A stretch of DNA of 64,000 bases, from IMG/VR virus record IMGVR_UViG_3300017917_003822, positions 62,001 to 126,000 of that record; one strand, given 5' to 3'. The notes beneath the pieces are model-generated. The model worked only from the letters and a program-made list of their open reading frames with translations. It was not told where the DNA came from and searched no databases. This document shows, one piece after another, positions 40,912-64,000 of the stretch. A program made the translations under genes and the position numbers. The stretch's first letter is position 1. Every line of letters begins with the position of its first letter.

Positions 40912-42450
40912 ATGCCTGTTACTAATATACAATCTTTAAATTATGGTGACTCACAATCACAGATCATCGACAAAATAAACTACAATTTTGACGAGATTGT
41001 CGAGGCTCATGGGGGAACTCAGGGTATTACCGGACCTACCGGGGATGTTGGACCTATTGGTTCGAGAGGTCCCATCGGATTTACAGGAGGTACCGGGGTT
41101 AGAGGTACTAGATGGTTTGTTGACTTAGTCCAGCCATCGGGAACTTTTAACACTGTTTCAGAGGGTGACTTTTGGATAGACGCCAGTGACGGAAGAATTT
41201 TTATTTTTACCGAATCTGGATGGACAAACACTGGATATACATTAGCTTCAGGAGGTAATATATTTAAACAGGAGGACTCATATTTCTCATCGGGTGGAAC
41301 CGGATCAGCTATTCTTTTTGACCAGATACTACCTCAGAATTATCTCATGATTATAGCTGACAAAGTACCAGAGTCGGGCGTACTGAATGAAAATTTGTCT
41401 AAATTTGTAATTTCCACAGATACCACTGTTAACGATTCACCGGTATTGGAGTTCTCCAAGAGTAATGTTGAATCTGGGGATATCTCTGATTACTCTCAGC
41501 ACCCTATCTTCAGATGGAAAAATTTCGACCCATTAAATAATTCTCTGGTTTTAGAAATACCCGGCGGATCTTTCGTAATAGGTTCCTCTGGAGGATTCCA
41601 ATCAACATTTGACTTTTTAACGGTACAGACACCATCAGCAACTTCCATTTCTTATGGTGCAACTTCAGGATCTGGTATATTTTCTACGGGAGGGTTTGAA
41701 TTAAATACCAGCGGACAATTTAAATTTAGAAGTTCTTTTTTTAATGTCACTGGTGGATCTGGTTATATTTCCGCGCCTGTTAATTTAACGGCAAGTCTTA
41801 CCCCGACAACCCCCTCAATCTTCACTTTTAGTGGTGGAACTGCAGGTTTCAGAACTTCAAGATCCGGTGACAGTTTTAATACGTTGTCAAACTCCGTTTA
41901 TGCTCTTTCGTTAGAATCATCTTCCGATCGTGAATTTTTCATAAACACAAAGGGAAAAATAAGAACAAAAAAAGCGGAGACCTCGATTTCCTATGCATCG
42001 ACTACACCTGGAGCTACCAGTACAGTATCGTCTAATTTGGTTAACTGGTACCTTATTTCAAGAACTTCTACTCCTGTGGCATCCTCAGTTTTACAATCAG
42101 GTAACACCATAGTCATAAATCCGGTTATACCAACCAGCAGCTATGTTGGTATTGGAGTTTATAGTGCAGCTGATTACTCTTGGGGAACGACTGGTGGACT
42201 TGAACCTGGTCAATCCATAGATATTAATGTCCACTATAGTCCAAACACAACTCAAAGGGGTTTTAGTGAGGGCTTCCGTTATATTGGTAAAGGAGCAACC
42301 AGTGGGGACGTATCAAATGTAATCACTTTACCTTTCGCAGCAACTAACGTGGACTTCACTTTAGCTAGAGGAGTTACATCCAGTAATATGACCGTTTTTT
42401 ATAGAGCTTATGGTTCTACTGGTGGATCTGGTGGATCTTTTGTTGTCTGA
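40912..42450 (+). CDS. Collagen-containing tail fibre, paralogue 1
   Basis: GDSQSQIIDKINYNF anchor, (GXY)10, then GDFWID. Confidence 0.75.
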   Translation: MPVTNIQSLNYGDSQSQIIDKINYNFDEIVEAHGGTQGITGPTGDVGPIGSRGPIGFTGGTGVRGTRWFVDLVQPSGTFNTVSEGDFWIDASDGRIFIFTESGWTNTGYTLASGGNIFKQEDSYFSSGGTGSAILFDQILPQNYLMIIADKVPESGVLNENLSKFVISTDTTVNDSPVLEFSKSNVESGDISDYSQHPIFRWKNFDPLNNSLVLEIPGGSFVIGSSGGFQSTFDFLTVQTPSATSISYGATSGSGIFSTGGFELNTSGQFKFRSSFFNVTGGSGYISAPVNLTASLTPTTPSIFTFSGGTAGFRTSRSGDSFNTLSNSVYALSLESSSDREFFINTKGKIRTKKAETSISYASTTPGATSTVSSNLVNWYLISRTSTPVASSVLQSGNTIVINPVIPTSSYVGIGVYSAADYSWGTTGGLEPGQSIDINVHYSPNTTQRGFSEGFRYIGKGATSGDVSNVITLPFAATNVDFTLARGVTSSNMTVFYRAYGSTGGSGGSFVV

Positions 42451-42456
42451 TATATA
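42449..42456 (+). promoter_or_regulatory. Putative late promoter GATATATA
   Basis: Overlaps the TGA stop of fibre 1; 33 nt before fibre 2. Confidence 0.55.
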
Positions 42457-42481
42457 CAATAATTATTCCACTTAATCTCAA

Positions 42482-44167
42482 ATGGCAGAATTAAAATTAC
42501 TAAGAATAGAGGAGGGTGACTCTCAGAAGACTTTAACAGATAAGGTAAATGTAAACTTTGCCAATCTGATAATCTTTGATGGTGGTCCCTATGGTAGAAT
42601 TGGAGAAAAAGGTCCAGAGGGAGCTAAAGGTGCCACCGGGCCGATTGGATCGTATGGAGATCGAGGGGTTCGTGGTACAATTTGGACTGTGGGTCCCTGC
42701 CAGCCAAGCCCAACAGGATCTATAGTCGGTGATTTTTGGTTGAATACAGATAATTCAAATTATGTTTATCGTTTCGGATCGGATAGAAATTGGTCACAAT
42801 ACGGTTTTAATTTAAAATCTGAGGATCTTTTCAGGGTATACGGACCACTTTTGAACTCAGCTGGTACCACTAATAAATACGGTTATTTTCTATCATCCAA
42901 TACTCCGATAGATTATACTGTTGTTATTACCGATAATCCATCTATGGATAGCGGAACTGAATTTTCACCAAACCCAATATTCAATCCACAATATTCAAAG
43001 TTTGTTATATCCGTGGACGGAACAAATCCTAATAAAAACATATTAGAATTCACAAAATCTGATTATGATGATACCTCGTTCACTGAAGGAACTCCTAGAT
43101 TTTATTGGAATCAGGGTCCTACTGCAGACAGAGGAAATTATGGGTTATCCTTCAAAAATTATGACCGGACAAATTTTAGCCTACCTAATTCAACTCTGAG
43201 ATTCGAGTCAACTTCGTCATCTATATCCCTTGATTCAGTCGGATTCAATCTTTATCTAAATAGTCAACAGTTATTTACTGTTAATTCATCAGGTGAAATT
43301 TATTTTGATTTCAATAACGGTACTGCTCTGTTTTCAACAAGAAATATATCATATAGCCCAAGTGGGTTTAATTTAACTACTGGATTAAATGTTTATTCAG
43401 AGTCAAGTGATCAAAATCCTCCACTGCATCTTATATCAGGATCTGCTGGAACCGGAAATTTAAGATACCTTTATAACTCGACGCCAAGTAATTCAGCATT
43501 TTTATTTAGAGTAGTTCAGGGAACAGGTACGTTATTTTCCACCTTTGGTGCGGGATATACTTTCATGGATAAGAGGGTTAATTCTATACAATCCCCACAA
43601 AATTTAACCCAAACTGCTTCAGGAACATATGGGTCAACTACCGTAAATTGGACAGCAGTTATACCATCCATAGCTGTAAATACAACGTCGGGTGATTATT
43701 TTTATGCAAATAATGGATCTGATTTTGTTATTGAAAGATCACCATCAGCTTCTCCCGGTGACAGAGGCATCTGTATATGGACTCCAGCAACAGGTGGAAC
43801 CGTTGGCTTTAACGGAGGATGGTTAAATTTGGTGGAGGATCAAGAGGCTATCACATTTAGAGTACATAGCACAAATCCGGGATCAACAGCAGATTGTTTT
43901 AGATATCTTGGATTGAATACGAGCCAATCCCCAAATATTATACCATCAACGTTTAATTCTGGTGTAAATGAGGCAGTTGCAATTTTACCTGCTGGTGAAT
44001 ATGCTTCCACTGCCGAATTTACGGTTGTTAACGTAAGGGGTGCAACTGGAGGTGCCGGTGGAACAGGAGGAACTCGAAGATGGTACAAAGTATTTTATTC
44101 TGCGTGGGGCGGTAATTTATCAAATACCTATTGTGGGGTTTTAACAACAAGTAATTCAATAGCTTAA
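42482..44167 (+). CDS. Collagen-containing tail fibre, paralogue 2
   Basis: GDSQKTLTDKVNVNF anchor, (GXY)10, then GDFWLN. Confidence 0.75.
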   Translation: MAELKLLRIEEGDSQKTLTDKVNVNFANLIIFDGGPYGRIGEKGPEGAKGATGPIGSYGDRGVRGTIWTVGPCQPSPTGSIVGDFWLNTDNSNYVYRFGSDRNWSQYGFNLKSEDLFRVYGPLLNSAGTTNKYGYFLSSNTPIDYTVVITDNPSMDSGTEFSPNPIFNPQYSKFVISVDGTNPNKNILEFTKSDYDDTSFTEGTPRFYWNQGPTADRGNYGLSFKNYDRTNFSLPNSTLRFESTSSSISLDSVGFNLYLNSQQLFTVNSSGEIYFDFNNGTALFSTRNISYSPSGFNLTTGLNVYSESSDQNPPLHLISGSAGTGNLRYLYNSTPSNSAFLFRVVQGTGTLFSTFGAGYTFMDKRVNSIQSPQNLTQTASGTYGSTTVNWTAVIPSIAVNTTSGDYFYANNGSDFVIERSPSASPGDRGICIWTPATGGTVGFNGGWLNLVEDQEAITFRVHSTNPGSTADCFRYLGLNTSQSPNIIPSTFNSGVNEAVAILPAGEYASTAEFTVVNVRGATGGAGGTGGTRRWYKVFYSAWGGNLSNTYCGVLTTSNSIA

Positions 44168-44168
44168 T

Positions 44169-46343
44169 ATGCATTTCAATACTAAATACATTTTTCAGGG
44201 TGACGATAGAGGTGAAATCGCCAGCAAGATCAATTACAACTTTGATCAGATAATTTCATTTGCTGTTGGTCCTGATGGACATATTGGCCCAAGAGGAGCT
44301 ACTGGATTATATGGTCCTGCAGGATTTAAGGGATTAACAGGAGCTACTGGAGCGAGAGGAACGATGATATTTAAACAACCAACTCAACCTCTTCCTTCTG
44401 AAACACAGGAATATGACATTTGGGTGGATAATTCTTCAGGTGAGGGTGACGTGAATGTTTTAGGAGCTACCGGAACTTGGAATTATTCAGGTTATTCTTT
44501 TTTTAGTTCCTCGTATTTTTCAACCTATTCTTGGATACTTGGACCAGCTGGATCCACTGATAAATATGTTGTTGGTATTAAAGATATAGCAAATGCTCCT
44601 ATCACTAATCTGGTTATAAGCGACGGTAACCCAACATCATCAGTTTCAAATCCAAATAATTCTAAGGTTCTTGTTGCCACGCAAGATCAGACGTCAACAC
44701 CAATATTTACTCTATCTAAAACTGGAGCTATTTCTTCTGGAGTACCTTCTTTTTATTGGGAGTCTACTGGATCCAATCGTAATCTTGTTTATAGGTCAAC
44801 GGGTGATCTTGAGATAATATCTCAGTTGAGGATGTCTATAGATTCAGGCCTGGCAAGAACTCTTTTATTTGGTAATAATGTTAATATAACAGCCTCGAGT
44901 TTTACTGTGGGTGGATCTGGTGATTTCCAACTAGCAGCAAACACAACTGTTGGTAGTGGTGGTATATTTAATGTACAGTCTCAAAATTTACTGATCGCCT
45001 CCTCATATTTCACTAGTGCTGATCCTTTGACTATATACGCAGCATCAGGAAATTATGTTCTCAATGATGTCCCAGTTTCTGCTGGATTAAACTCCGGTAT
45101 AACAATATCAACAACATCCACGGCAAATGATAGTTTTTCGATAAATGATCTAACTGGAAATCCGATTTTATCGGGTAAACCATTTGGATCGGTTGATAGC
45201 GGGAAACACTCACAAACAATATTTGGCTCAACCGGTGGATTTACCGGAGGTACCGCCGGTCCATTTTCATACCATGTAAGAAGGGCTTCTCAAGTTACTA
45301 AAAGCACGGTTACAGTTCTATCAGCTGCTCGATATCTTTCAACCACAGCAGGGACAGATACCCTAAATAACGTTTTCGATCTAACAGATCTGTCTCTTTG
45401 GAATTCAAATGTTATAGTCGTTACACCTACATTGTATACGAATAGCGGACAAGCTGGGGTTTATTTGAGAATACCAGCATCATATTTGAATTCATTAGAG
45501 CCAGTTTATAATACGGGTCGAACCAATATTTATAGAATTCTTTTAAACTCACTAGATTCTAGTTTATCTGCTAGGTTTATTAATGGTTTTGTTTTCAGTT
45601 ACACCAATTACGGTTCAGGAGGACTAACTTCAACGTCGATTTTAAATTACTTTAATTTACCAACTCCGATTTCTATTAATAGTTATTGCCAGTATATCGA
45701 TCTCCATTGGCTAGGAATATCAAACTCTTCCAATCTTAATCCGAGACTTTTCTATAAAGCATGTAACGGTGTCGGTGGATATTTAGAATTAACCAACTTA
45801 AATAGTATAGGATCGGAACAACCTATTACATCCGGGTCATCTCCAACCTCTGGTACAGGAAGCCCGAGTTTTGACGACGGTAGCTTCATTTCAAGTGGTG
45901 GTGGATCGTTTTTCAATCCATTCTGTCCAACTCCAGATATGTTAATTTATTTAGGTGATGGTAATTGGATTGCTGCTGGGGAGCTTAATATCGGAGATAT
46001 AGTATATACGCTTCATGAGCAAACTAACCAGTGGGATTATTATAAAGTTTCTTCAGTTGACAGAGCCACTCAGCCTGTTATCTCTGCAATTATTGGGGGC
46101 AAAGAAATTAAGGTATCAGAGCACCATAGATTCCTCACTGTTGATAATGAGTATGTTTCCATTAACGACCTTCAGATTGGTTCCGAACTTAGAACGATCG
46201 ACGGTTCAGTTAAATTAGAATCTAAAACAAATATAGGAGAGACTGAAGTTGTTAAAATAGAAATTGAAAATGCACATACGTATGTTCTGGAGGGTGTAAT
46301 CTCACACAACGTAAAAATAAGTCAGTTTATAGCAGCACCATAA
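44169..46343 (+). CDS. Collagen-containing tail fibre, paralogue 3, with a C-terminal Hint domain
   Basis: GDDRGEIASKINYNF anchor, (GXY)10, then YDIWVD; C-terminal CPTPDM...SHN. Confidence 0.75.
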   Translation: MHFNTKYIFQGDDRGEIASKINYNFDQIISFAVGPDGHIGPRGATGLYGPAGFKGLTGATGARGTMIFKQPTQPLPSETQEYDIWVDNSSGEGDVNVLGATGTWNYSGYSFFSSSYFSTYSWILGPAGSTDKYVVGIKDIANAPITNLVISDGNPTSSVSNPNNSKVLVATQDQTSTPIFTLSKTGAISSGVPSFYWESTGSNRNLVYRSTGDLEIISQLRMSIDSGLARTLLFGNNVNITASSFTVGGSGDFQLAANTTVGSGGIFNVQSQNLLIASSYFTSADPLTIYAASGNYVLNDVPVSAGLNSGITISTTSTANDSFSINDLTGNPILSGKPFGSVDSGKHSQTIFGSTGGFTGGTAGPFSYHVRRASQVTKSTVTVLSAARYLSTTAGTDTLNNVFDLTDLSLWNSNVIVVTPTLYTNSGQAGVYLRIPASYLNSLEPVYNTGRTNIYRILLNSLDSSLSARFINGFVFSYTNYGSGGLTSTSILNYFNLPTPISINSYCQYIDLHWLGISNSSNLNPRLFYKACNGVGGYLELTNLNSIGSEQPITSGSSPTSGTGSPSFDDGSFISSGGGSFFNPFCPTPDMLIYLGDGNWIAAGELNIGDIVYTLHEQTNQWDYYKVSSVDRATQPVISAIIGGKEIKVSEHHRFLTVDNEYVSINDLQIGSELRTIDGSVKLESKTNIGETEVVKIEIENAHTYVLEGVISHNVKISQFIAAP
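45924..46310 (+). other. Hint / bacterial intein-like (BIL) domain, 129 aa
   Basis: Cys1 (CPTPDM), block B-like VSEHHRF, block F/G VVKIEIENAHTYVLEGVISHN; the +1 residue is Val. Confidence 0.9.
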
Positions 46344-46364
46344 AAAATTAAAATATATATAACT

Positions 46365-46628
46365 ATGATAAATCTAACAAAAAAAGAACAGGAAAGCATG
46401 CTTAATCTATCTAAGGAATTTGTAAGCATACATCAAGAGATTCTCCAGGTTGAGAAAACTATTAAGGAGATGGAAGACAGATCATGTGAATTGATATCCC
46501 AACTCGAGAGATGCAGAGAAAACGAGAGTGATTTTATCTGCAAATTAGAAAAAAAATACGGAATCGGATCTCTAGATCCTATCAATCTCGTATGGAAAAA
46601 AGAAACAGTAAATAATGAAGTACATTAA
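46365..46628 (+). CDS. Small coiled-coil protein
   Basis: 87 aa with a heptad pattern and a KYGIGSLDP end; overlaps the next gene. Confidence 0.55.
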   Translation: MINLTKKEQESMLNLSKEFVSIHQEILQVEKTIKEMEDRSCELISQLERCRENESDFICKLEKKYGIGSLDPINLVWKKETVNNEVH

Positions 46629-47463
46629 CAAAGAAAATTTAGGTAAGATATCGGGTTTATTAGGAAATAGATTTTTTCTAATTGCAGTAATTGTTGTTTT
46701 AATAATGCTCTCGTTAAAACAGTGTGGTGATGTCGATCATGCTAAAGCTGAAGCATTAAGAGAACATAATAACTATTTGGCATCTCTTGATTCGGTTAGA
46801 GTTATAAAGAATGAGCTTGGAGAGCTTATCGTGGAAAAATCGGCATATCAACTTAAGGTTTCTGAATTAAGCAATGAACAAAAAGATCTGATAAAAAGAC
46901 TCGACTTAAACACGAACGGGAGAGGAACAACACCAAAGACCGTTATCCAGACAGTTTCAGAATATAATGAAACTATAACAAACATAAAATCGGAGGTTGT
47001 TAAGGACCCAAATGGTTCTGAAGCAATAACATTCAATCATGAACCAACTTTACCAGGAAAAAATAAATTAAAAATATCAGGAAAGGTACCATACGATCTT
47101 AATTTACTGAGGGATCCTGCAGATTCTACTAAATATATAGCTTCAGTTAATCCACTAGGTACAACTTTAACCATAGAGCAGAATATTGATATCGTTACTG
47201 GTCTTTATCAAGATCCCAAATCTAAAAGAATAATGACTAGGGTAAGTACAACCTATCCAAATTTAACTTTTAGCGAAGTTAATTCTTTTGATATTACTGA
47301 TAATCCGGAAGCTAGAAAAGCTTTAAAAGCAGCTAGAAAGGAATTTGGTCTTGGAGTAAGCGTAGGTTATGGTTTAATAGGAAACTCAAATAGCATGAGC
47401 ACCGGTGTTTTTGTTGGACTTGGTCTCCACTATACACCAAAATTTTTACAATTCGGAAAATAA
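46615..47463 (+). CDS. Membrane-anchored coiled-coil protein, possible spanin
   Basis: N-terminal transmembrane segment FFLIAVIVVLIMLSL followed by KQC, a coiled coil, and a C-terminal amphipathic beta-hairpin FGLGVSVGYG..VFVGLGLHY. Confidence 0.45.
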   Translation: MKYINKENLGKISGLLGNRFFLIAVIVVLIMLSLKQCGDVDHAKAEALREHNNYLASLDSVRVIKNELGELIVEKSAYQLKVSELSNEQKDLIKRLDLNTNGRGTTPKTVIQTVSEYNETITNIKSEVVKDPNGSEAITFNHEPTLPGKNKLKISGKVPYDLNLLRDPADSTKYIASVNPLGTTLTIEQNIDIVTGLYQDPKSKRIMTRVSTTYPNLTFSEVNSFDITDNPEARKALKAARKEFGLGVSVGYGLIGNSNSMSTGVFVGLGLHYTPKFLQFGK

Positions 47464-47472
47464 AATATAAAA

Positions 47473-50205
47473 ATGGCATTTACTACTACATCCAAATTTG
47501 TACAGATTACTCCATACCTTTTGATGGAGTATATGTATGCTGATGAACCAACACCGGAAACACACTTTGTTAATAGTGGAGGGGTTACCGTGGGGTATAA
47601 TAAATTGATAAATGGATATAGAAGTAATACAGTCCAAATTTTCAATAGAAATTCCGATTATCCCACTACACATAATACAACCGAGAATAACGTGGTTAGA
47701 ATAGGTGAGTCATCTTTTGTGACACTTGATTCCAATCTGATAGTTCCATTTAATGATTACTCTGATGAGCTAACTGATACTATAAACTTACCAATAGTTT
47801 TTCCGTCTAATTTGCTGGTTGTTTATGATACTGTTAGATATCACATAAGAGCTGGATATAATCTAAACAATCTTGATGGCTTGATTTTAACTGTCGAGTA
47901 TCAAGATCAAAATTTAGAATACGTTACAGCTTCTCAAATTCTATTAAAGAAAGGAACTGAGCAAGAGTACAATTTAAATCCAAATCCAGTTACGATCGGA
48001 GCAAATATCTATGATAAGTACTTTGAGATAAAGCTTCCTAACTTGAAGGATATGAACGATAAGTATTTAGCTGCTTCGTCCGCTTTTAAACCAGAAACAC
48101 TTGCTTCGTTAATTAGTTCGAGTGGAAATGGATTTATTTACGGATCCCCACTAAGAGTAACTGCTTGGCAGGTTCAAAATACTGTAGATTTTAACGGCTA
48201 CGAGAGATATAATTGTGCCGAAATAGCTACACTTTCTCTAGAGCAGGAGGATCCTTTTTCTAATATAGGTGCTACCATCAAGGAATCCGACAGGGGTCAA
48301 TTTTTTGAATATTATGCAACTGATAACGAGGGATTTATAGAGGATTTTATACTTTTTCAAAATTCGATAGGAAATGGGTATTATATAAGTCACCAGATAG
48401 AAGTACTAGAACAAATAGGGGCAGCTCTTATACAAACCTCAGGTTTCCAGTCTATACAAACGACTGCATACGATCTTCCTAATTACTATAGACCTATTGT
48501 TAGAAACGCAGCTGTTGCTGCTAGTTTTACCCTTAGATACACGATGTCTCTGATTAATAGCGTTAATCAAAGTCGAATAATTAGAATATCTACATACAGC
48601 TCGGTTAACCCTAGTCAGTGGGGAACTAATATAACTCCGATACAGCTAAGTACATTCCCGCAAGTTCAGAAGATCTATAACAGAGTTTATTCACAACCTG
48701 GTATTACTGTTGGCGGCGGAACAACAGTAGCACCTAAGGAAATTGTTAAATACACGAACGTTTTTATTAATCAAAATTATGTTACGTCCACAGTAAATAA
48801 TTTGACATTTACTGATAATAGTCTGAATATAAATTCAGGAGCTGAACAAACAACGGCTTTTGGAACCGGAAAAATGAACATCACAATTTCACCATTCGAC
48901 AATTACTACAAGTTTAAATTTATTAAAAGTGGTCCTTCAGCAGATCCAGTTCCGATTGATTTAAGTGCTTCTGGTAATTTTAATATCTCCTTTGTTGATA
49001 ATGTTGGTAACAAAATACAGGTTCCCGCACTGGAGGATAGAAATCTAGCAAATCCATCAACTGGAGAATTAGCTTTTAAACTTGATGAATCCATTTCAAC
49101 CAAGGTTCTTCAGCTAAGCGACAGAAGATTTTTTATTACAAACGGAACATCCATAAATAATGCTCAATCCGGAGTTGCTGCAAAAGAGGTGGTTTCAGTT
49201 GATGCAGGTGTTACTGATAATGTGGTTGAAAAGAGAATTGAATCTGTCATCGCAAATAGAAGAAATGAAGCTATGGCTATCAGCGGAGCCAATAACTATA
49301 TAAATATTCCAGCATCCAATATACTTACACCAGTAAATAATGCTAATTCTGTCATGTATTGGGGGTATTGGAAAAAACCAGGAGAGGATGATATTATTGT
49401 TGGTGCTACAGCAGCAGCTCCAGTTATAACTCCGACTAGTGGTGTTGGTGTTGTTGGAGCTGTAGAGGAACCTGCTCCTGTTCCTATAATTAAAAATGTA
49501 AAACCGAGAACTTCGGGTTCTGGTAAATTCTTGATTGGTTCCGCAACTGCGAACACCACTGAGACATTAACTGGAAGTGCATTGATATCAGCTCTAAGTG
49601 CTGAAATTGCTGGATATAAAGCTACTGGATGGCAGGATCAGACCATTATAAATTACTTCATGGTTCCTGGTAAAGCTGGATATATTAAATATCCTGGACT
49701 AACCAAACAACAGTTTATCCAGGCAGCTACTGGTATATTAGCACCGGCGACTCTAACTAGATTTGGTAGAACAAATAATGGCGGTGGCGGATGTCCAACT
49801 CCAGATATGAGGATCTTAACATCAGATGGTGATTATATTAAGGCTGGTGATATTAAAGTAGGAACTAGTGTTCATACGGTCCATGAAAAAACTGGAGAAT
49901 TTGGTGACTATAGAGTTTCTTATGTGGGTAGAATGATCCAGCCTATATTAAGAGTCAGCATAGATGGAAAATCTATAACAGTTTCAGATTCCCATAAATT
50001 TTTAACTGAGAATGGTGAATATGTTACAATCTCTAACATAACTGAGGGCACTTTAATTAAAACCATTAACGGATTAGCAAAACTTGAAAGTAAGCAGAGA
50101 ATAGGTGAGGGAGAGGTTATTAAAATAGAGGTTGAAAATGCACACACTTACGTTCTGGAGGGAGTTATCTCACATAACATTAAAGCTGCTTCCTTAGTAG
50201 AATAA
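47473..50205 (+). CDS. Large structural protein with a C-terminal Hint domain
   Basis: 910 aa; ends NNGGGG-CPTPDM...VISHN-IKAASLVE. Confidence 0.65.
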   Translation: MAFTTTSKFVQITPYLLMEYMYADEPTPETHFVNSGGVTVGYNKLINGYRSNTVQIFNRNSDYPTTHNTTENNVVRIGESSFVTLDSNLIVPFNDYSDELTDTINLPIVFPSNLLVVYDTVRYHIRAGYNLNNLDGLILTVEYQDQNLEYVTASQILLKKGTEQEYNLNPNPVTIGANIYDKYFEIKLPNLKDMNDKYLAASSAFKPETLASLISSSGNGFIYGSPLRVTAWQVQNTVDFNGYERYNCAEIATLSLEQEDPFSNIGATIKESDRGQFFEYYATDNEGFIEDFILFQNSIGNGYYISHQIEVLEQIGAALIQTSGFQSIQTTAYDLPNYYRPIVRNAAVAASFTLRYTMSLINSVNQSRIIRISTYSSVNPSQWGTNITPIQLSTFPQVQKIYNRVYSQPGITVGGGTTVAPKEIVKYTNVFINQNYVTSTVNNLTFTDNSLNINSGAEQTTAFGTGKMNITISPFDNYYKFKFIKSGPSADPVPIDLSASGNFNISFVDNVGNKIQVPALEDRNLANPSTGELAFKLDESISTKVLQLSDRRFFITNGTSINNAQSGVAAKEVVSVDAGVTDNVVEKRIESVIANRRNEAMAISGANNYINIPASNILTPVNNANSVMYWGYWKKPGEDDIIVGATAAAPVITPTSGVGVVGAVEEPAPVPIIKNVKPRTSGSGKFLIGSATANTTETLTGSALISALSAEIAGYKATGWQDQTIINYFMVPGKAGYIKYPGLTKQQFIQAATGILAPATLTRFGRTNNGGGGCPTPDMRILTSDGDYIKAGDIKVGTSVHTVHEKTGEFGDYRVSYVGRMIQPILRVSIDGKSITVSDSHKFLTENGEYVTISNITEGTLIKTINGLAKLESKQRIGEGEVIKIEVENAHTYVLEGVISHNIKAASLVE
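49792..50178 (+). other. Hint / BIL domain, 129 aa
   Basis: Cys1, VSDSHKF block B, VIKIEVENAHTYVLEGVISHN; the +1 residue is Ile. Confidence 0.9.
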
Positions 50206-50219
50206 AAAAATAATTTTAG

Positions 50220-50768
50220 ATGATACTCAATCCTAAATCAAGTAGTTTTTATTTCGTTTTTCCGAAGGGATTTTTCCCTGAGATTGTTGTTGATAAATAT
50301 TTGCCATATTTAAAAAAGCAGCCAATACCTTTTGACAACGTTGCAAATTATATGAATAGCACCATCAGATCTATTGGATTCCCATCCATGACCATAGATT
50401 CAGTTGAGCAAATAAGACCATTAGGAAAAAGAATAAATTATAAAAGTGGTACACCAATTCAGGATCTTTTTAGTAAAGATTTTGCGATCCAATTTAAGTT
50501 GGTTGATGGCTTTATTAATTACTTCATAATGTTGGATACGATTATACATTTCATGGACTTTCAGAATCCCGGTCTTTTCCTTCAGAACTTACCACTTAGA
50601 ATTATGGATAATGAAGGTAACATAATAACCTCAGTTACTTTTAAGGAGGTTACTTTAACCTCTTTTTCTGAACTTGAGTTAGCTTATACTTCCAATTCGC
50701 CTCAACCGGCATCATTTACTGTAGGGTTTAAATGTAACTACCTAGATATAGTTTTGGAAGCTAAATAA
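50220..50768 (+). CDS. Tail tube-fold protein (gp3 tail terminator / gp19-like)
   Basis: 182 aa; the pattern LRIMDNEGN..VTFKEVTLTSFSELELAY..FTVGFKCNY is typical of the gp3/gp19 fold. Confidence 0.6.
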   Translation: MILNPKSSSFYFVFPKGFFPEIVVDKYLPYLKKQPIPFDNVANYMNSTIRSIGFPSMTIDSVEQIRPLGKRINYKSGTPIQDLFSKDFAIQFKLVDGFINYFIMLDTIIHFMDFQNPGLFLQNLPLRIMDNEGNIITSVTFKEVTLTSFSELELAYTSNSPQPASFTVGFKCNYLDIVLEAK

Positions 50769-51056: not shown

Positions 51057-51764
51057 ATGAATTTAGTCGGCATAGACTTTTCTATAAACTCACCAGCATT
51101 TTGTTGTTTAAAGGATGGTAAATACACTTGGGGCTCTGTGACAAGATCTGATAGATCTTCGGAATCACTTTTGAAAAATTCAAAAAAACCATACTTTATA
51201 TTGGAACAAGATGACAATTTTGTTCTAAAGTTCGTAGATAAAAAAGATTTACCCGATGACTATTCGGGAAGGGAGAGAGCTAAAATTGGTTACTTCCTTG
51301 AAATAGTTAATGCTCTTTGGGATTCTATAATTGAAGTGATGGGGCACGATCCGTTCCATGTTGCCATGGAGGGTTTAAGCTTCTCGTCAAATGGAAATGC
51401 ACTTATTGATATTTCGATGGCAACTGGACTACTTAGGGAAAGAATAATTTCCGAGGTGGGTTCAGATTCTTTTCATGTATTTTCTCCAACCACCATTAAA
51501 AAATATGCGGTAAAGGGAAATGCAAAAAAGGATGAATTGTATCATGCTCTTTATAATTTTAAAGAAGATGAAACAAATTTGGAACATTTTGGTAAAATAT
51601 TAGAAACAAACAAAGAGGAGTGGATTACCCCAAGTAAGGTGGTAAATAAACCGATCGATGATATTGTGGACGCAACTTGGATTAATTTATATTTAAAGAA
51701 AGAATTAGGAGAATTTTATGGAATTAAAGGAAATCTTGAAGGAACATCTAAATCAGGCCTCTGA
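51057..51764 (+). CDS. RuvC-like (RNase H fold) nuclease / Holliday junction resolvase
   Basis: LVGIDFSINSPA, VAMEGLSF, SPTTIKK...GNAKK and DDIVDA motifs. Confidence 0.8.
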   Translation: MNLVGIDFSINSPAFCCLKDGKYTWGSVTRSDRSSESLLKNSKKPYFILEQDDNFVLKFVDKKDLPDDYSGRERAKIGYFLEIVNALWDSIIEVMGHDPFHVAMEGLSFSSNGNALIDISMATGLLRERIISEVGSDSFHVFSPTTIKKYAVKGNAKKDELYHALYNFKEDETNLEHFGKILETNKEEWITPSKVVNKPIDDIVDATWINLYLKKELGEFYGIKGNLEGTSKSGL

Positions 51765-52320
51765 CATTTTAAATGACTTCATTAACAACGACGAGTATCT
51801 AAGCTCGGTAGAGGAGGCTGCTCAGACTATAATCACAGCACTACAAAACGGTAATAAAATAATATCAGCAGGTAATGGCGGATCTATGTGTGACGCTATG
51901 CACTTTGCGGAAGAACTATCTGGCAGATGGAGGGAAGACAGAAAACCTCTGGCTGCCATTTCTGTATCAGATCCCTCCCATATAACTTGCGTTGGTAACG
52001 ATTACGGATTTGACCAGATTTTTTCCAGATATCTAGATGCTGTTGGGAACGAAGGTGATGTATTTTTTGGTATAACGACCTCAGGTAATTCTAATAATAT
52101 CACCCGAGCGCTGGTTACTGCCAAGCGTAAAGGTATGAGAACTGTCATACTCACATCAGACAGGCCTGAGAGCGACGTACGATTAAAATTTAATCATCTT
52201 ATTGATAATACCATACTAACACCAAGAAACAAATATGCGGACCGTACGCAAGAACTACATATCAAAATAATACATTCCCTGATTGATATGATAGAGCGAA
52301 AATTGGGATTGAAAAATTAA
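51718..52320 (+). CDS. gmhA: Phosphoheptose (sedoheptulose-7-phosphate) isomerase
   Basis: GNGGSMCDAMHFAEEL, SHITCVGNDYGF, TSGNS and ADRTQELHIKIIH. The catalytic His/Glu/Gln/His set is present. Confidence 0.93.
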   Translation: MELKEILKEHLNQASDILNDFINNDEYLSSVEEAAQTIITALQNGNKIISAGNGGSMCDAMHFAEELSGRWREDRKPLAAISVSDPSHITCVGNDYGFDQIFSRYLDAVGNEGDVFFGITTSGNSNNITRALVTAKRKGMRTVILTSDRPESDVRLKFNHLIDNTILTPRNKYADRTQELHIKIIHSLIDMIERKLGLKN

Positions 52321-52330
52321 AGTTAAAAAA

Positions 52331-52357
52331 GAAACAAAAAGAAAACAAAAAGTAAAA
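52331..52357 (+). promoter_or_regulatory. Putative early/middle promoter GAAAC-N17-TAAAA
   Basis: Upstream of the gp32-like gene; one mismatch to the other copies. Confidence 0.35.
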
Positions 52358-52380
52358 ATTAAAATTAAAAAAACAAAAAC

Positions 52381-53352
52381 ATGAGTAATTTAGACATCTT
52401 TAATCTAGACGCAGAAGCTTTCGTAACGAAAACAGCACAACAAGGCGAAAAAGACCTTGAATTTTACAAACCATATCCTGAAGATGGGAAGGATGGAGTT
52501 TACAAATCTTTAATCAGATTCGTACCGAATCCGGTAGATCCAGCTAAATCTAAAGTCCACAAATACTACGTGTATTTGAATGATCCGGTTAGCGGAAATG
52601 GATTTTCAGTAGACTGTCCGTCCACTGTAGGTAAGAAATCGGTTTTAAAGGATTTATTCTGGAAACTTAAGAATTCACATTCTGCAGCAGATCAGGAATT
52701 ATCTAAGAAATTTTCCAGAAAAGAGGATTTCTATTCATTAATTCAAGTTGTACAGGACAAGAACAAGCCTGAACTTGAAGGAAAAATTATGATCTTCAAA
52801 TTTGGTAAGAAAATAAATGACATGATCGAGGCACAATTACAGCCAGAATATGGTGACCCATGTAATCCTTTTGATCTTTTCGAAGGTAGAGAATTTGCAG
52901 TAAGCGTTAGAAAAGTTGGTGAGTGGAACAACTATGATCTTTGTTCATTCGTAGGTGAAAAGACTCCAATTAAAGTTAATGGGGTTCCTATGAAAAAGAC
53001 TCAGGAGGATATGAAAACGGTTCTTGATTATCTGAATGAGGGTCCTAAAAACCTAACAAGTTTCGACTATAAGGATTGGGATGATGAAATGACTGATAAA
53101 GTTATGAATGTAATCAGAAACACAGTTCCTGAACAAAGAGTGATCAATGAAATCATGGGTGGTGTGGCTTCTTCTAAATCAGCTCCATCTCCAGTAGCAA
53201 AGGAAACTTCTTCATCTGATATCTATAACGAGGTTTCTAATACTAAGGTTTCTGGACATACTGAAAGAGTAGAATCTCCAGTACAACAAGCTCCTAGTTC
53301 TTCTTCAACAAGTTCTCCGAATTCATTAGAGGATTTGTACGCTGATCTTTAA
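52381..53352 (+). CDS. Single-stranded DNA-binding protein (T4 gp32-like)
   Basis: LIRFVP, EGKIMIFKFGKKINDMI, NPFDLFEG, WNNYD and an acidic tail LEDLYADL. Confidence 0.9.
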   Translation: MSNLDIFNLDAEAFVTKTAQQGEKDLEFYKPYPEDGKDGVYKSLIRFVPNPVDPAKSKVHKYYVYLNDPVSGNGFSVDCPSTVGKKSVLKDLFWKLKNSHSAADQELSKKFSRKEDFYSLIQVVQDKNKPELEGKIMIFKFGKKINDMIEAQLQPEYGDPCNPFDLFEGREFAVSVRKVGEWNNYDLCSFVGEKTPIKVNGVPMKKTQEDMKTVLDYLNEGPKNLTSFDYKDWDDEMTDKVMNVIRNTVPEQRVINEIMGGVASSKSAPSPVAKETSSSDIYNEVSNTKVSGHTERVESPVQQAPSSSSTSSPNSLEDLYADL

Positions 53353-62000: not shown

Positions 62001-62020
62001 AAGCCGACTTAGAATAGTAT

Positions 62021-64000
62021 ATGGCTCAATTTCCAATCAATCCCCGAATAGGGCAAGCTTTTCTAGCAGATTCCAAAATATATGTTTGGAGTGGAACTCA
62101 GTGGGTTGCGGCACAGGTTGGAGGGACAGGAGACGGATCATCAGGAACCTCTGGAACTAGTGGAGTTGATGGAAATTTTTATGGATCCTCTGGAACCTCT
62201 GGAACCTCCGGGGTTAATGGATCCAGTGGAACAAGTGGTACACCGGGATCTTCTGGAATATCAGGATCTTTCGGAACAAGTGGATCTAGTGGAACATCAG
62301 GATCTACCGGAAGTCCAGGATCTTCTGGGTCTAGTGGATCTTCTGGTGCTAATGGTTCGTCTGGAACATCAGGAATTAATGGATCCAGTGGAACAAGTGG
62401 CTCGAATGGATCATCAGGAACTTCTGGATCTAGTGGAAGCAGCGGAACTTCAGGCACTAGAGGATCTAGTGGAACTTCGGGTTCTTCGGGAACATCTGGT
62501 GCTAATGGTTCTTCAGGAACATCTGGATCTAATGGATCTTCGGGTGTCAGTGGAATTAATGGTATAGATGGAACTTCTGGATCTAGTGGAACTTCAGGTA
62601 CTAGAGGATCTAGTGGAACTTCTGGTTCTTCAGGAACATCTGGTGCTAATGGTTCTTCAGGAACCTCTGGTGCTAACGGTTCATCGGGTTCATCGGGAGT
62701 TAGTGGAATTAATGGTGTTGATGGAACCTCAGGATCTAGTGGAAGTAGCGGAACTTCAGGTACTGGCGGATCGAGTGGATCTTCGGGTTCTTCCGGAACA
62801 TCTGGCTCTAATGGTTCTTCAGGAACATCTGGTGCTAATGGTTCATCGGGATCTTCGGGTGTCAGTGGAATTAATGGTGTTGATGGAACTTCAGGATCTA
62901 GCGGTACTTCTGGTGTTAATGGCTCTAGTGGAACATCCGGTTCATCAGGATCGTCAGGAACCAGTGGAATCACCGGATCGTCGGGATCTAGTGGATCTTC
63001 GGGTGTCAGTGGAATTAATGGTGTTGATGGAACTTCAGGATCTAGCGGTACTTCTGGTGTTAATGGATCTAGTGGTACTTCGGGATCTGGTGGATCGAGT
63101 GGAACTTCAGGATCTGGTGGATCTAGTGGAACTTCGGGATCTAGAGGATCTTCAGGAACCAGTGGGACAAGTGGATCCTCAGGGTCTAGTGGAGATTCTG
63201 GCTCTAGTGGAACATCCGGTTCATCAGGATCGTCAGGAACCAGTGGAATCACTGGATCGTCGGGATCTAGTGGATCGTCGGGTGTCAGTGGAGTTAATGG
63301 TGTTGATGGAACCTCAGGATCTAGTGGTACCTCTGGTGTTAATGGATCTAGTGGTACTTCGGGATCTGGTGGATCGAGTGGAACTTCAGGATCTAGAGGA
63401 TCTTCGGGAACCAGTGGAACCAGTGGATCTTCAGGATCTAGTGGAGCTTCTGGATCTAGTGGTACCTCCGGTTCTAGTGGTTTATCAGGATCTAGTGGAA
63501 CTTCGGGATCTAGAGGATCTTCGGGAACCAGTGGAACCAGTGGATCTTCAGGATCTAGTGGATCTTCAGGAGTCAGCGGGGTTAACGGTGTTGATGGTTC
63601 TTCCGGATCCAGTGGAACATCCGGAAGTAACGGAACTCCGGGTTCTTCAGGTTCTTCAGGTTCTTCAGGTTCTTCAGGTTCTTCAGGTTCTTCAGGAACT
63701 TCGGGATCTAGAGGATCCAGTGGAACATCTGGTATAAACGGTTCTTCCGGCTCTTCGGGAACGTCAGGGTCCAGTGGAACATCAGGGACAAGAGGAACTA
63801 GCGGAACATCTGGTATAAGTGGAAACGACGCATCTAATTCAGGGAGATGGGAATATTCAAATTCGATTGCACCGACCAATCCAGGCACCAGCAGATTCTG
63901 TACAAATAGTTCTTCTCTAGGATCTGTTAATGTATTAAGTATTAGTATTTACGACATAAACTCGGTGGATTACACTAAATGGTTTCAAGCATCTGACACA
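62021..64000 (+). CDS. Gly-Ser/Thr collagen-like fibre protein, truncated by the window end and absent from the ORF track
   Basis: ATG at 62021 (MAQFPINPRIGQAF..YVWSGTQW) with an open frame to 64000; a long Gly-X-Y region, then a non-repetitive domain (GRWEY..). Confidence 0.85.
   Translation, partial: MAQFPINPRIGQAFLADSKIYVWSGTQWVAAQVGGTGDGSSGTSGTSGVDGNFYGSSGTSGTSGVNGSSGTSGTPGSSGISGSFGTSGSSGTSGSTGSPGSSGSSGSSGANGSSGTSGINGSSGTSGSNGSSGTSGSSGSSGTSGTRGSSGTSGSSGTSGANGSSGTSGSNGSSGVSGINGIDGTSGSSGTSGTRGSSGTSGSSGTSGANGSSGTSGANGSSGSSGVSGINGVDGTSGSSGSSGTSGTGGSSGSSGSSGTSGSNGSSGTSGANGSSGSSGVSGINGVDGTSGSSGTSGVNGSSGTSGSSGSSGTSGITGSSGSSGSSGVSGINGVDGTSGSSGTSGVNGSSGTSGSGGSSGTSGSGGSSGTSGSRGSSGTSGTSGSSGSSGDSGSSGTSGSSGSSGTSGITGSSGSSGSSGVSGVNGVDGTSGSSGTSGVNGSSGTSGSGGSSGTSGSRGSSGTSGTSGSSGSSGASGSSGTSGSSGLSGSSGTSGSRGSSGTSGTSGSSGSSGSSGVSGVNGVDGSSGSSGTSGSNGTPGSSGSSGSSGSSGSSGSSGTSGSRGSSGTSGINGSSGSSGTSGSSGTSGTRGTSGTSGISGNDASNSGRWEYSNSIAPTNPGTSRFCTNSSSLGSVNVLSISIYDINSVDYTKWFQASDT
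62183..63829 (+). repeat. About 183 Gly-X-Y triplets (GSS/GTS/GVS/GIN/GVD), including (GGTTCTTCA)6 at 63641-63694 and larger internal duplications
   Basis: Visible directly; 1647 nt equals 183 x 9 nt. Confidence 0.92.

What the first reader, a model, noticed from the sequence alone, without database searches (positions are those of the whole stretch)
45924..50205. Twin C-terminal Hint domains on two different virion proteins, lacking the splicing nucleophile
Seen: two paralogous 129-aa domains of identical length (CPTPDM...ENAHTYVLEGVISHN) end a collagen fibre (44169) and an unrelated 910-aa protein (47473). Each is followed by only 8-10 residues, and the +1 residue is Val or Ile. Established: canonical splicing needs Cys/Ser/Thr at +1. 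Hint domains with Cys1 and His-Asn but no +1 nucleophile (BIL or Hedgehog type) instead cleave themselves or pass the N-terminal thioester to an external nucleophile. The second copy is preceded by GGGG, so cleavage would leave an activated C-terminal Gly-Gly. Inference: a shared maturation or ligation module that either removes itself or covalently couples these proteins to a partner (protein, lipid or glycan) during assembly. There is no homing endonuclease, so this looks like a domesticated domain rather than a selfish intein.
Basis: partly seen in the sequence, partly recalled or inferred. Interest (0 to 1): 0.8.

Follow-up and report, generated by a model that had tools for sequence, protein, structure and literature searches.

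The report
Intein-like tails on phage virion proteins
Two unrelated tail-region proteins of an uncultured 270-kb freshwater phage each end in a small intein-like (Hint) domain that keeps its self-cleaving residues but lacks the residue needed for normal splicing, so it most likely cuts itself off after translation; the same module ends many uncultured-phage tail proteins and has not been studied.

Summary
ORF 44169-46343 (a 724-aa collagen-like fibre) and ORF 47473-50205 (910 aa, just upstream of a tube-like gene) each end in a 129-aa Cys...His-Asn domain. The two domains are 53% identical and are followed by 10 and 8 residues, with Val and Ile at +1. The domain is a genuine Hint fold: AF2 pLDDT 94, TM 0.84 to BIL domains and mini-inteins, and profile E 4e-12 to the gp41-1 intein. 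All autoprocessing residues are kept. The subfamily falls below Pfam thresholds. It has 1830 hits at E<1e-3, all of those examined metagenomic, many at the very end of phage tail and fibre proteins. Gly is usually at -1 and Lys is at +1 or +2 in 131 of 137 domains. The distribution is sporadic: a sister phage (88% identity) has lost the ORF910 copy, fibre relatives show at least 7 gains, losses or swaps including a second Hint class at the same site, and one relative keeps the tail without the Hint. dN/dS is about 0.1. Best reading: a BIL-type, endonuclease-free, self-excising add-on that is optional for the host protein. Ligation to a partner is not excluded, and Tetrahymena BIL2 is a precedent. 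This is a new variant of a known kind.

The parts
44169..46343 (+). Collagen-like tail fibre gene (724 aa), third of three tandem paralogues and the only one with a Hint
   Evidence: ORF. G-X-Y run at residues 34-64, with Pfam Collagen and PHROG tail-fibre hits. 30% identity to the neighbouring fibre over the first 200 aa.
45924..46310 (+). Hint copy 1 (129 aa, Cys1 to Asn129). Block B is S65-x-x-H68 and block G is S127-H128-N129. The -1 residue is Phe.
   Evidence: AF2 pLDDT 94.3. Foldseek TM 0.84 to BIL and mini-inteins.
46311..46340 (+). 10-residue tail after copy 1 (+1 Val, +2 Lys)
   Evidence: Residues 133-139 are disordered in the AF2 model (pLDDT <50). Lys at +1/+2 is a family feature.
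47473..50205 (+). 910-aa conserved tail-module protein. Its 773-aa body has no recognisable family.
   Evidence: Most orthologues are 740-780 aa and lack the Hint.
49780..49791 (+). Gly-Gly-Gly-Gly immediately before Cys1 of copy 2
   Evidence: Gly is at -1 in 7 of 7 Hint-bearing orthologues.
49792..50178 (+). Hint copy 2 (129 aa)
   Evidence: pLDDT is about 80-89 for this part of the full-length model.
50179..50202 (+). 8-residue tail after copy 2 (+1 Ile, +2 Lys)
50220..50768 (+). Tail-tube-like gene (182 aa) directly downstream
   Evidence: phrog_45 'tail tube', E 3.8e-8. Weak similarity to the C-terminus of T4 gp19.
40912..44167 (+). Two paralogous collagen-like fibre genes without a Hint (40912-42450 and 42482-44167)
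46365..47463 (+). Two small ORFs between the Hint-bearing genes: an 87-aa coiled-coil-like ORF and a 282-aa ORF with an N-terminal hydrophobic segment. They are conserved whether or not the ORF910 Hint is present.
   Evidence: Synteny with L002, L003 and L004.

Best explanation
Each domain is a bacterial-intein-like (BIL, A-type-like) Hint domain without an endonuclease. It is inserted in frame between the flexible Gly/Ser-rich C-terminal linker of a phage tail protein and a short stub peptide. After translation, Cys1 with the block-B His would convert the bond at the N-terminal junction (Phe|Cys in the fibre, Gly|Cys in the 910-aa protein) into a thioester (inferred). The terminal His-Asn would cut off the stub by succinimide formation (inferred). 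Because no Cys/Ser/Thr sits at +1, the thioester is resolved either by water or by an amine. The amine could be the freed alpha-amine or the conserved Lys at +1/+2 of the stub. Either way the 129-aa domain is removed, and the mature protein ends at or near the point where Hint-less orthologues end. In evolutionary terms it is an optional, repeatedly gained, lost and swapped C-terminal add-on of tail and fibre genes. The host protein does not need it.
For: Fold and motifs: AF2 pLDDT 94.3. Foldseek TM is 0.84 to Tetrahymena BIL2 and 0.83 to Clostridium BIL 2lwy, followed by DnaB/DnaE mini-inteins and Hedgehog. Profile E is 3.7e-12 to the gp41-1 intein, 1.8e-9 to 2lwy and 3.4e-9 to BIL2. TIGR intein N- and C-terminal models align in register. 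C1, H68, A117, H128 and N129 are invariant in 98 sequences. No +1 nucleophile: Val and Ile here, and Cys/Ser/Thr in only 6 of 137 family domains. Lys is at +1/+2 in 131 of 137, and Gly is at -1 in 39 of 57 C-terminal cases. Selection: dN/dS is 0.08-0.12 between orthologous copies. Optional add-on: most orthologues of both proteins lack it and end in the same variable linker. The host-protein tree puts Hint-less P0005 as sister of the window protein inside a Hint-bearing group, with 3 changes forced. The fibre tree needs at least 7 changes, and a second Hint class (24% identical, with Pfam Hint, Intein_splicing and PT-HINT hits) occupies the same site. In-frame insertion behaviour: the tail motif SQDFSNI follows the Hint in P0130 but follows the linker directly in its Hint-less sister P0136. 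Phage tail context is general: the PHROG hits of the N-terminal parts of other proteins ending in this Hint are mostly to tail fibre, spike, minor tail or other tail and virion structural families; the rest are a protease, a hyaluronidase and five unannotated families. BIL domains are described as autocleaving elements in hypervariable regions (PMC7664689, PMC7765530).
Against: No biochemical or proteomic evidence of processing exists, and no cultured phage carries the module. If only N-terminal cleavage mattered, the invariant Asn and the conserved Lys would be unnecessary, so the chemistry at the C-terminal junction is not understood. The block-F position that usually holds Asp holds Lys here. 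Strong conservation and recurrent recruitment of two Hint classes to the same fibre site could instead mean that the module has a positive function.
Confidence: 0.6

Rival explanations
1. Ligation device. The Hint thioester is not hydrolysed. It is passed to an external amine or hydroxyl, such as a Lys of another virion protein, a lipid or a glycan, and this covalently couples the C-terminus of the fibre or the 910-aa protein during assembly. This would resemble the way Tetrahymena BIL2 conjugates a ubiquitin-like domain or Hedgehog adds cholesterol.
For: The best structural match is BIL2, which forms Lys isopeptide bonds to several substrates without ATP (PMC8616854). Poly-Gly precedes Cys1 in copy 2 and in 68% of C-terminal family members. 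Two different proteins of one tail carry the module.
Against: The -1 residue is Phe, Tyr or Ser in many fibre copies. A close relative does without the ORF910 Hint. No partner gene co-varies with Hint presence in syntenic loci. The invariant terminal Asn and stub are not needed for transfer, and Hedgehog lacks them.
Confidence: 0.12
2. Domesticated maturation or chaperone module. The Hint is required for folding, trimer registration or timed assembly of the tail protein and then removes itself. This would be a functional analogue of the Peptidase_S74 intramolecular chaperone of tail spikes.
For: It recurs at the extreme C-terminus of many unrelated tail and fibre proteins. Two Hint classes were recruited to the same fibre site. 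There is strong purifying selection. Each copy is inherited with its host gene.
Against: The sister lineage lost it while keeping 88% identity, and most orthologues never had it. Two paralogous fibres in the same window lack it. Purifying selection is equally expected for a selfish self-excising insert.
Confidence: 0.2
3. PT-HINT-type cargo release. The Hint exists to cleave off a C-terminal effector or toxin.
For: 23 of 70 family members with internal copies pass PF07591 at E<1e-5. The nearest ESM-Atlas structures are polymorphic-toxin HINT proteins (TM about 0.9).
Against: Only 8-10 residues follow the domain here, and 2-28 residues follow it in 57 family members, so there is no cargo. The window copies score below the PF07591 cut-off.
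Confidence: 0.03
4. Inactive relic. The domain is not processed and stays on the virion as a structural knob.
For: None directly. No processing data exist.
Against: All catalytic positions are invariant across 98 diverged sequences, and dN/dS is about 0.1.
Confidence: 0.05

Closest known systems
A-type bacterial intein-like (BIL) domains (Amitai et al. 2003; Dassa et al. 2004; Clostridium thermocellum BIL, PDB 2lwy)
   Same: Hint fold, Cys1, terminal His-Asn, no +1 nucleophile and no endonuclease. They sit in hypervariable regions of non-conserved proteins. Cleavage products are expected to predominate.
   Different: The hosts here are phage tail and fibre proteins, and the domain sits at the extreme C-terminus with only a 2-28-aa stub. 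Lys at +1/+2 and Gly at -1 are family signatures. By sequence it is no closer to 2lwy (E 1.8e-9) than to a phage-type mini-intein (gp41-1, E 3.7e-12).
Tetrahymena thermophila BUBL BIL2 (PDB 6y75/6tmm)
   Same: It is the top structural match (TM 0.84). It is a Hint without canonical splicing, and its thioester is resolved by a Lys epsilon-amine.
   Different: Identity is only 16%. The N-extein here is not ubiquitin-like. Ligation has not been shown here.
Pretoxin HINT (PF07591) of polymorphic toxins
   Same: This is the nearest named family in Pfam and ESM-Atlas space. Some subfamily members pass its threshold.
   Different: No toxin or other domain follows the Hint. The window copies score 21.2 bits (copy 1) and no reported hit (copy 2), against a cut-off of 27.7.
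Canonical mini-inteins (gp41-1, DnaB, DnaE)
   Same: Blocks A, B, F and G are present, the size is the same, and these give the best profile E-values.
   Different: There is no +1 Cys/Ser/Thr, the domain is not in a conserved site, and the C-extein is a stub.
Hedgehog Hog/Hint autoprocessing domain
   Same: Both share the Hint fold (TM 0.76-0.79 to the Hedgehog structures 1at0 and 6tyy). Copy 2 has a Gly|Cys junction. The second Hint class on fibre relatives begins GGGG|CFLPGT and hits PF01079.
   Different: A terminal His-Asn is present, there is no sterol-recognition region, and the window copies do not hit PF01079.
Peptidase_S74 intramolecular chaperone of tail spikes and fibres
   Same: It is a C-terminal, self-removing module of phage tail fibres, which is a functional analogy only.
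   Different: The fold and chemistry are unrelated, and there is no PF13884 hit.

Membership tests
Hint (Hedgehog/intein) superfamily | Hint beta-fold | tested here: met
   AF2 pLDDT 94.3. Foldseek probability 1.00 and TM 0.74-0.84 to inteins, BIL and Hedgehog.
Hint (Hedgehog/intein) superfamily | Splicing blocks A (Cys1), B (Ser/Thr-x-x-His), F and G (His-Asn) | tested here: met
   C1, S65-x-x-H68 and H128-N129 are invariant or nearly so. The register agrees with TIGR01445/TIGR01443 and with DnaE alignments.
Canonical class-1 intein | Cys/Ser/Thr at +1 | tested here: not met
   +1 is Val and Ile. Only 6 of 137 domains in the subfamily have Cys/Ser/Thr there.
Canonical class-1 intein | Inserted in a conserved site between two functional exteins | tested here: not met
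   It lies in a hypervariable Gly-rich tail, and the C-extein is 8-10 aa.
A-type BIL | N-terminal Cys plus C-terminal His-Asn without a +1 nucleophile and without an endonuclease | tested here: met
A-type BIL | Located in variable regions of non-conserved proteins and sporadic among relatives | tested here: met
   The definition is taken from PMC7765530.
A-type BIL | Sequence clustering with the described A-type BIL family | tested here: inconclusive
   2lwy scores E 1.8e-9, which is no better than the gp41-1 intein at 3.7e-12. The original BIL seed alignments were not available.
A-type BIL | Autocleavage at the N- and/or C-terminal junction | not testable with these tools
   Needs expression and mass spectrometry.
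PT-HINT (PF07591) | Score above the Pfam gathering cut-off | tested here: not met
   Copy 1 scores 21.2 bits and copy 2 has no reported hit, against a cut-off of 27.7. 23 of 70 other subfamily members match at E<1e-5.
PT-HINT (PF07591) | Followed by a C-terminal toxin domain | tested here: not met
   Only 10 and 8 residues follow.
Hedgehog Hog domain | Hint followed by a sterol-recognition region, with no terminal Asn | tested here: not met
   His-Asn is present and the tail is 8-10 aa. PF01079 is not hit.
BUBL-type BIL (Tetrahymena) | Flanked by ubiquitin-like domains, with isopeptide ligation | tested here: not met
   The N-exteins are a collagen-like fibre and an unassigned 773-aa body. The ligation chemistry is not testable here.
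Peptidase_S74 intramolecular chaperone | PF13884 domain at the fibre C-terminus | tested here: not met
   No hit.

The most novel reading that the evidence does not exclude
The Hint domains are ATP-independent ligases of the virion. The thioester at the C-terminal Gly (or Phe) of the tail protein is captured by a specific amine, either a Lys of a neighbouring tail protein or a group on the host surface. This would create a covalent isopeptide staple during assembly or adsorption, and would be the phage counterpart of Tetrahymena BIL2 ubiquitin-like conjugation and Hedgehog cholesterol addition. The conserved Lys at +1/+2 would be the built-in default acceptor.
Probability: 0.12. Interest if true: 0.85.

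Novelty: new variant of a known kind. Interest (0 to 1): 0.55.

Why it matters
If processing is confirmed, Hint/BIL thioester chemistry would join the mechanisms that mature phage tail proteins. Those known so far are S74 chaperone autoproteolysis and prohead-protease cleavage. The subfamily is large (1830 representative clusters at E<1e-3), falls below Pfam thresholds, and has no example among cultured phage genomes. Its near-universal Lys at +1/+2 and Gly at -1 give a testable handle on how a Hint resolves its thioester without a side-chain nucleophile at +1. That question bears on the evolution of inteins, BILs and Hedgehog, and on self-cleaving or self-ligating protein tags. The recurrent gain, loss and class swapping at one fibre site also gives a natural system for asking whether endonuclease-free Hint domains persist as selfish inserts or as useful modules.

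Tried and rejected
(1) Calling the 910-aa protein a tail sheath. It has no Pfam, PHROG or NCBIfam hit and no PDB hit with a 54-sequence profile. hhalign against T4 gp18 gives probability 0.1%. The AF2 model is too poor to search with (pLDDT 51.5), and ESM-Atlas scores are about 0.6, which is noise. Only its position next to a tube-like gene and weak phrog_20013 hits support a structural role.

(2) Recent intragenomic duplication or gene conversion between the two copies. The Hint tree places each copy with the orthologues of its own host gene. Codon identity at conserved residues (41/70) is not clearly above cross-genome pairs (32-36 of about 70).

(3) A deletion scar of the Hint in the Hint-less relative L002. 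None is recognisable.

(4) Hint-less alleles in four metagenomes. No contig skips either Hint. One X4 contig breaks 1-2 nt after copy 2, but it could not be retrieved.

(5) Relatives in cellular genomes. None was found with strict patterns.

(6) Relatives in cultured phages. Only Corynebacterium phage terminase mini-inteins at 30% identity were found.

(7) Literature on C-terminal Hint domains of phage fibres. Nothing was found in five searches. The 'Hint domain' mentions in phage papers concern ordinary inteins.

Full report
**Observation.** The window is part of IMG/VR contig IMGVR_UViG_3300017917_003822 (270,629 bp). It is a T4-like-baseplate myophage with 34-39% G+C. ORF 44169-46343 (724 aa) is the third of three tandem collagen-like fibre paralogues. 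ORF 47473-50205 (910 aa) lies directly upstream of a tube-like gene at 50220-50768 (phrog_45, E 3.8e-8). Both ORFs end in a 129-aa segment running from Cys to His-Asn, at 45924-46310 and 49792-50178. The two segments align without gaps at 53% identity, and BLASTP over the C-termini gives E 5e-54. They are followed by 10 and 8 residues, with Val and Ile at +1. The second copy is preceded by GGGG and the first by GGGSFFNPF. The bodies of the two proteins are unrelated. Contigs from four independent metagenomes bridge both junctions.

**What the domain is.**
- Single-sequence searches give weak but consistent hits to mini-inteins and to the Clostridium BIL domain, to Pfam Intein_splicing and PT-HINT below cut-off, and to the TIGR intein N- and C-terminal models in the right register.
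- A profile of 98 relatives hits the gp41-1 intein at 3.7e-12, NpuDnaB at 1.1e-9, BIL 2lwy at 1.8e-9 and Tetrahymena BIL2 at 3.4e-9.
- AlphaFold2 with that alignment gives pLDDT 94.3, with only the last seven tail residues disordered.
- Foldseek against the PDB returns BIL2 (TM 0.84), 2lwy (0.83), DnaB/DnaE/RecA mini-inteins and Hedgehog (0.76-0.79), all at probability 1.00.
- C1, H68 (block B, S-x-x-H), A117, H128 and N129 are invariant.
- There is no room for an endonuclease.

It is therefore a mini Hint domain that keeps all the residues used for the N-S acyl shift and for Asn cyclisation.

**The subfamily.** An exhaustive HMMER search of 1.84 billion representatives finds 1830 proteins at E<1e-3 and 370 at E<1e-10. 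Among the best 150, 137 full domains could be scored:
- Cys/Ser/Thr is at +1 in only 6.
- Lys is at +1 or +2 in 131, against a background Lys frequency of 4.5%.
- In 57 cases the domain sits 2-28 residues from the end of the protein. In that group Gly is at -1 in 39 and Gly-Gly in 26.

The N-terminal parts of such proteins rarely match Pfam. Their PHROG hits are mostly to tail fibre, spike, minor tail or other tail and virion structural families, with one protease, one hyaluronidase and five unannotated families. Sampled contexts are arrays of very large unannotated genes on viral contigs. All members looked up are unnamed metagenomic proteins. Among 50,697 deposited phage genomes, only ordinary terminase mini-inteins match. 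Strict patterns found nothing in 185,579 cellular genomes. Five literature searches found no description of C-terminal Hint domains on phage tail proteins.

**Distribution among relatives.**
- *ORF910 family.* Of the 120 best relatives of the 910-aa protein, 113 are Hint-less. Apart from one 522-aa fragment, these are about 725-810 aa long and end in a variable, often Gly/Arg-rich tail. Seven carry the Hint, always with Gly at -1 and with Ile-Lys or Lys after His-Asn. On a tree of the protein bodies, the window protein is sister (support 95) to the Hint-less P0005, inside a group whose other members carry the Hint. Three changes are forced. The syntenic locus L002 encodes that Hint-less protein, while its fibre still has the Hint.
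- *Fibre family.* Of 97 relatives, 14 carry this Hint. Eleven carry a different Hint class (GGGG|CFLPGT...VHN|K) that is 24% identical and passes the Pfam cut-offs of AXH in all four members scanned and of Hint, Intein_splicing or PT-HINT in some of them. Others carry unrelated C-terminal modules, and most carry nothing. The fibre-body tree needs at least 7 well-supported changes.
- *In-frame insertion.* P0130 has the Hint followed by the tail ...YLSQDFSNINN. Its sister P0136 lacks the Hint and has ...FISQDFSNI directly after the same Ser/Thr/Gly linker. The Hint therefore behaves as a clean in-frame insertion or deletion between linker and tail.
- *Relation of the two window copies.* They are not each other's closest relatives. 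Each groups with the copies in the orthologues of its own host protein. The ORF910 copies may derive from a fibre lineage (support 93/85).
- *Selection.* Orthologous copies evolve at dN/dS 0.08-0.12, with synonymous sites near saturation.

**Mechanism (inferred).** The intact Cys1, block-B His and His-Asn, together with the missing +1 nucleophile, match A-type BIL domains. Those domains mainly give N- and C-terminal cleavage products and lie in hypervariable regions (PMC7664689; PMC7765530). I conclude that the domain excises itself. A thioester forms at the N-terminal junction, Asn cyclisation cuts the C-terminal junction, and the thioester is resolved by water or by an amine of the released stub. 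The mature proteins would then resemble their Hint-less orthologues. The invariant Asn and the conserved Lys at +1/+2 show that the C-terminal junction matters, and simple Hedgehog-like N-cleavage would not need it. A Lys side chain could reach the thioester from either position. The top structural match, Tetrahymena BIL2, does use a Lys epsilon-amine to form an isopeptide (PMC8616854). Whether the stub becomes ligated by a peptide or an isopeptide bond, or the thioester passes to another molecule, cannot be decided by computation.

**Evolutionary reading.** Sporadic presence, recent loss in a sister phage, replacement by another Hint class and clean indel behaviour all point to an optional, exchangeable module rather than an indispensable maturation step. 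Purifying selection does not separate a useful domain from a selfish one, because a self-excising insert must stay active for the host protein to work. On the other side, recurrent recruitment to the C-termini of tail proteins, and the convergent Gly(-1) and Lys(+1) in two Hint classes, leave room for a positive role in assembly timing, a chaperone function or ligation.

**Comparison and novelty.** The domain works like an A-type BIL and meets that family's operational definition. By sequence it is no closer to the one solved BIL than to phage mini-inteins, so formal membership is open. It is not a canonical intein, because it has no +1 nucleophile and no conserved insertion site. It is not a PT-HINT in the functional sense, because there is no cargo. 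It is not a Hedgehog Hog domain, because His-Asn is present and there is no sterol-recognition region. I rate it a new variant of a known kind: a large, unmodelled Hint subfamily specialised to the C-termini of phage tail proteins.

**Limits.** The identity of the 910-aa protein's body is unresolved. 'Virion protein' is therefore an inference from gene position. No processing data exist.

Noticed in passing
window 62003-64000 (+), runs off the window end: A long collagen-like ORF. It has a short N-terminal head followed by about 590 aa of GSSGTSG-type G-X-Y repeats. It explains the local G+C jump to 0.477 and the open reading frames in several frames on both strands.
   Followed up: partly
window 40912-46343: Three tandem paralogous collagen-like fibre genes share about 30% identity in the first 200 aa. 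Only the third carries a Hint. The first ends in a Gly-rich ...GGSGGSFVV tail that resembles the linker before Hint copy 1.
   Followed up: partly
window 50180 (run X4, read laying): One metagenomic contig matches the window from 50180 onward but is unlike it for at least 255 nt upstream. The breakpoint is 1-2 nt after the last codon of Hint copy 2. Read in frame, it would give the same tail (V-KAASLVE) without a preceding His-Asn, so it may be a Hint-less allele. Three exact-pattern scans did not recover it.
   Followed up: partly
proteins P0132, P0136, P0212 (fibre relatives): In place of the Hint, these carry an unassigned C-terminal module of about 110 aa. It also begins with Cys (CNLFYNQGYLPKEIW...) and ends in a Lys-rich tail. 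It has no Pfam hit.
   Followed up: partly
proteins P0218, P0223, P0228, P0229, P0231-P0233, P0240: The same Hint subfamily occurs as two or more tandem copies in one protein. The copies are separated by short Lys/Arg/Pro-rich linkers (for example His-Asn followed by KRRRP) or by only 4-7 residues.
   Followed up: no
L019:8244-13377: Four consecutive radical-SAM/SPASM genes lie two genes downstream of a 1024-aa protein that ends in this Hint.
   Followed up: no
Hint copy 1, residues 29-34 and 111 (window 46008-46025 and 46254-46256): A subfamily-specific motif, T-x-H-E-x-T, has no counterpart in intein blocks. In addition, the block-F position that usually holds Asp holds Lys.
   Followed up: no
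window 51057-53352: Downstream of the tube-like gene lie a 235-aa ORF that I read by eye as RuvC-like (no Pfam hit), a SIS-domain (GmhA-like) protein and a gp32-type ssDNA-binding protein. The tail module therefore ends at the tube-like gene.
   Followed up: partly
whole window (look-up of sequencing runs): Near-identical sequence (40-78% of sampled 31-mers) is present in pond, marine, freshwater, wastewater, salt-marsh and soil metagenomes from many studies. This jumbo phage lineage is geographically widespread. The nearest cultured relative of the 910-aa protein is in Flavobacterium myophage MaF61 (24% identity).
   Followed up: partly
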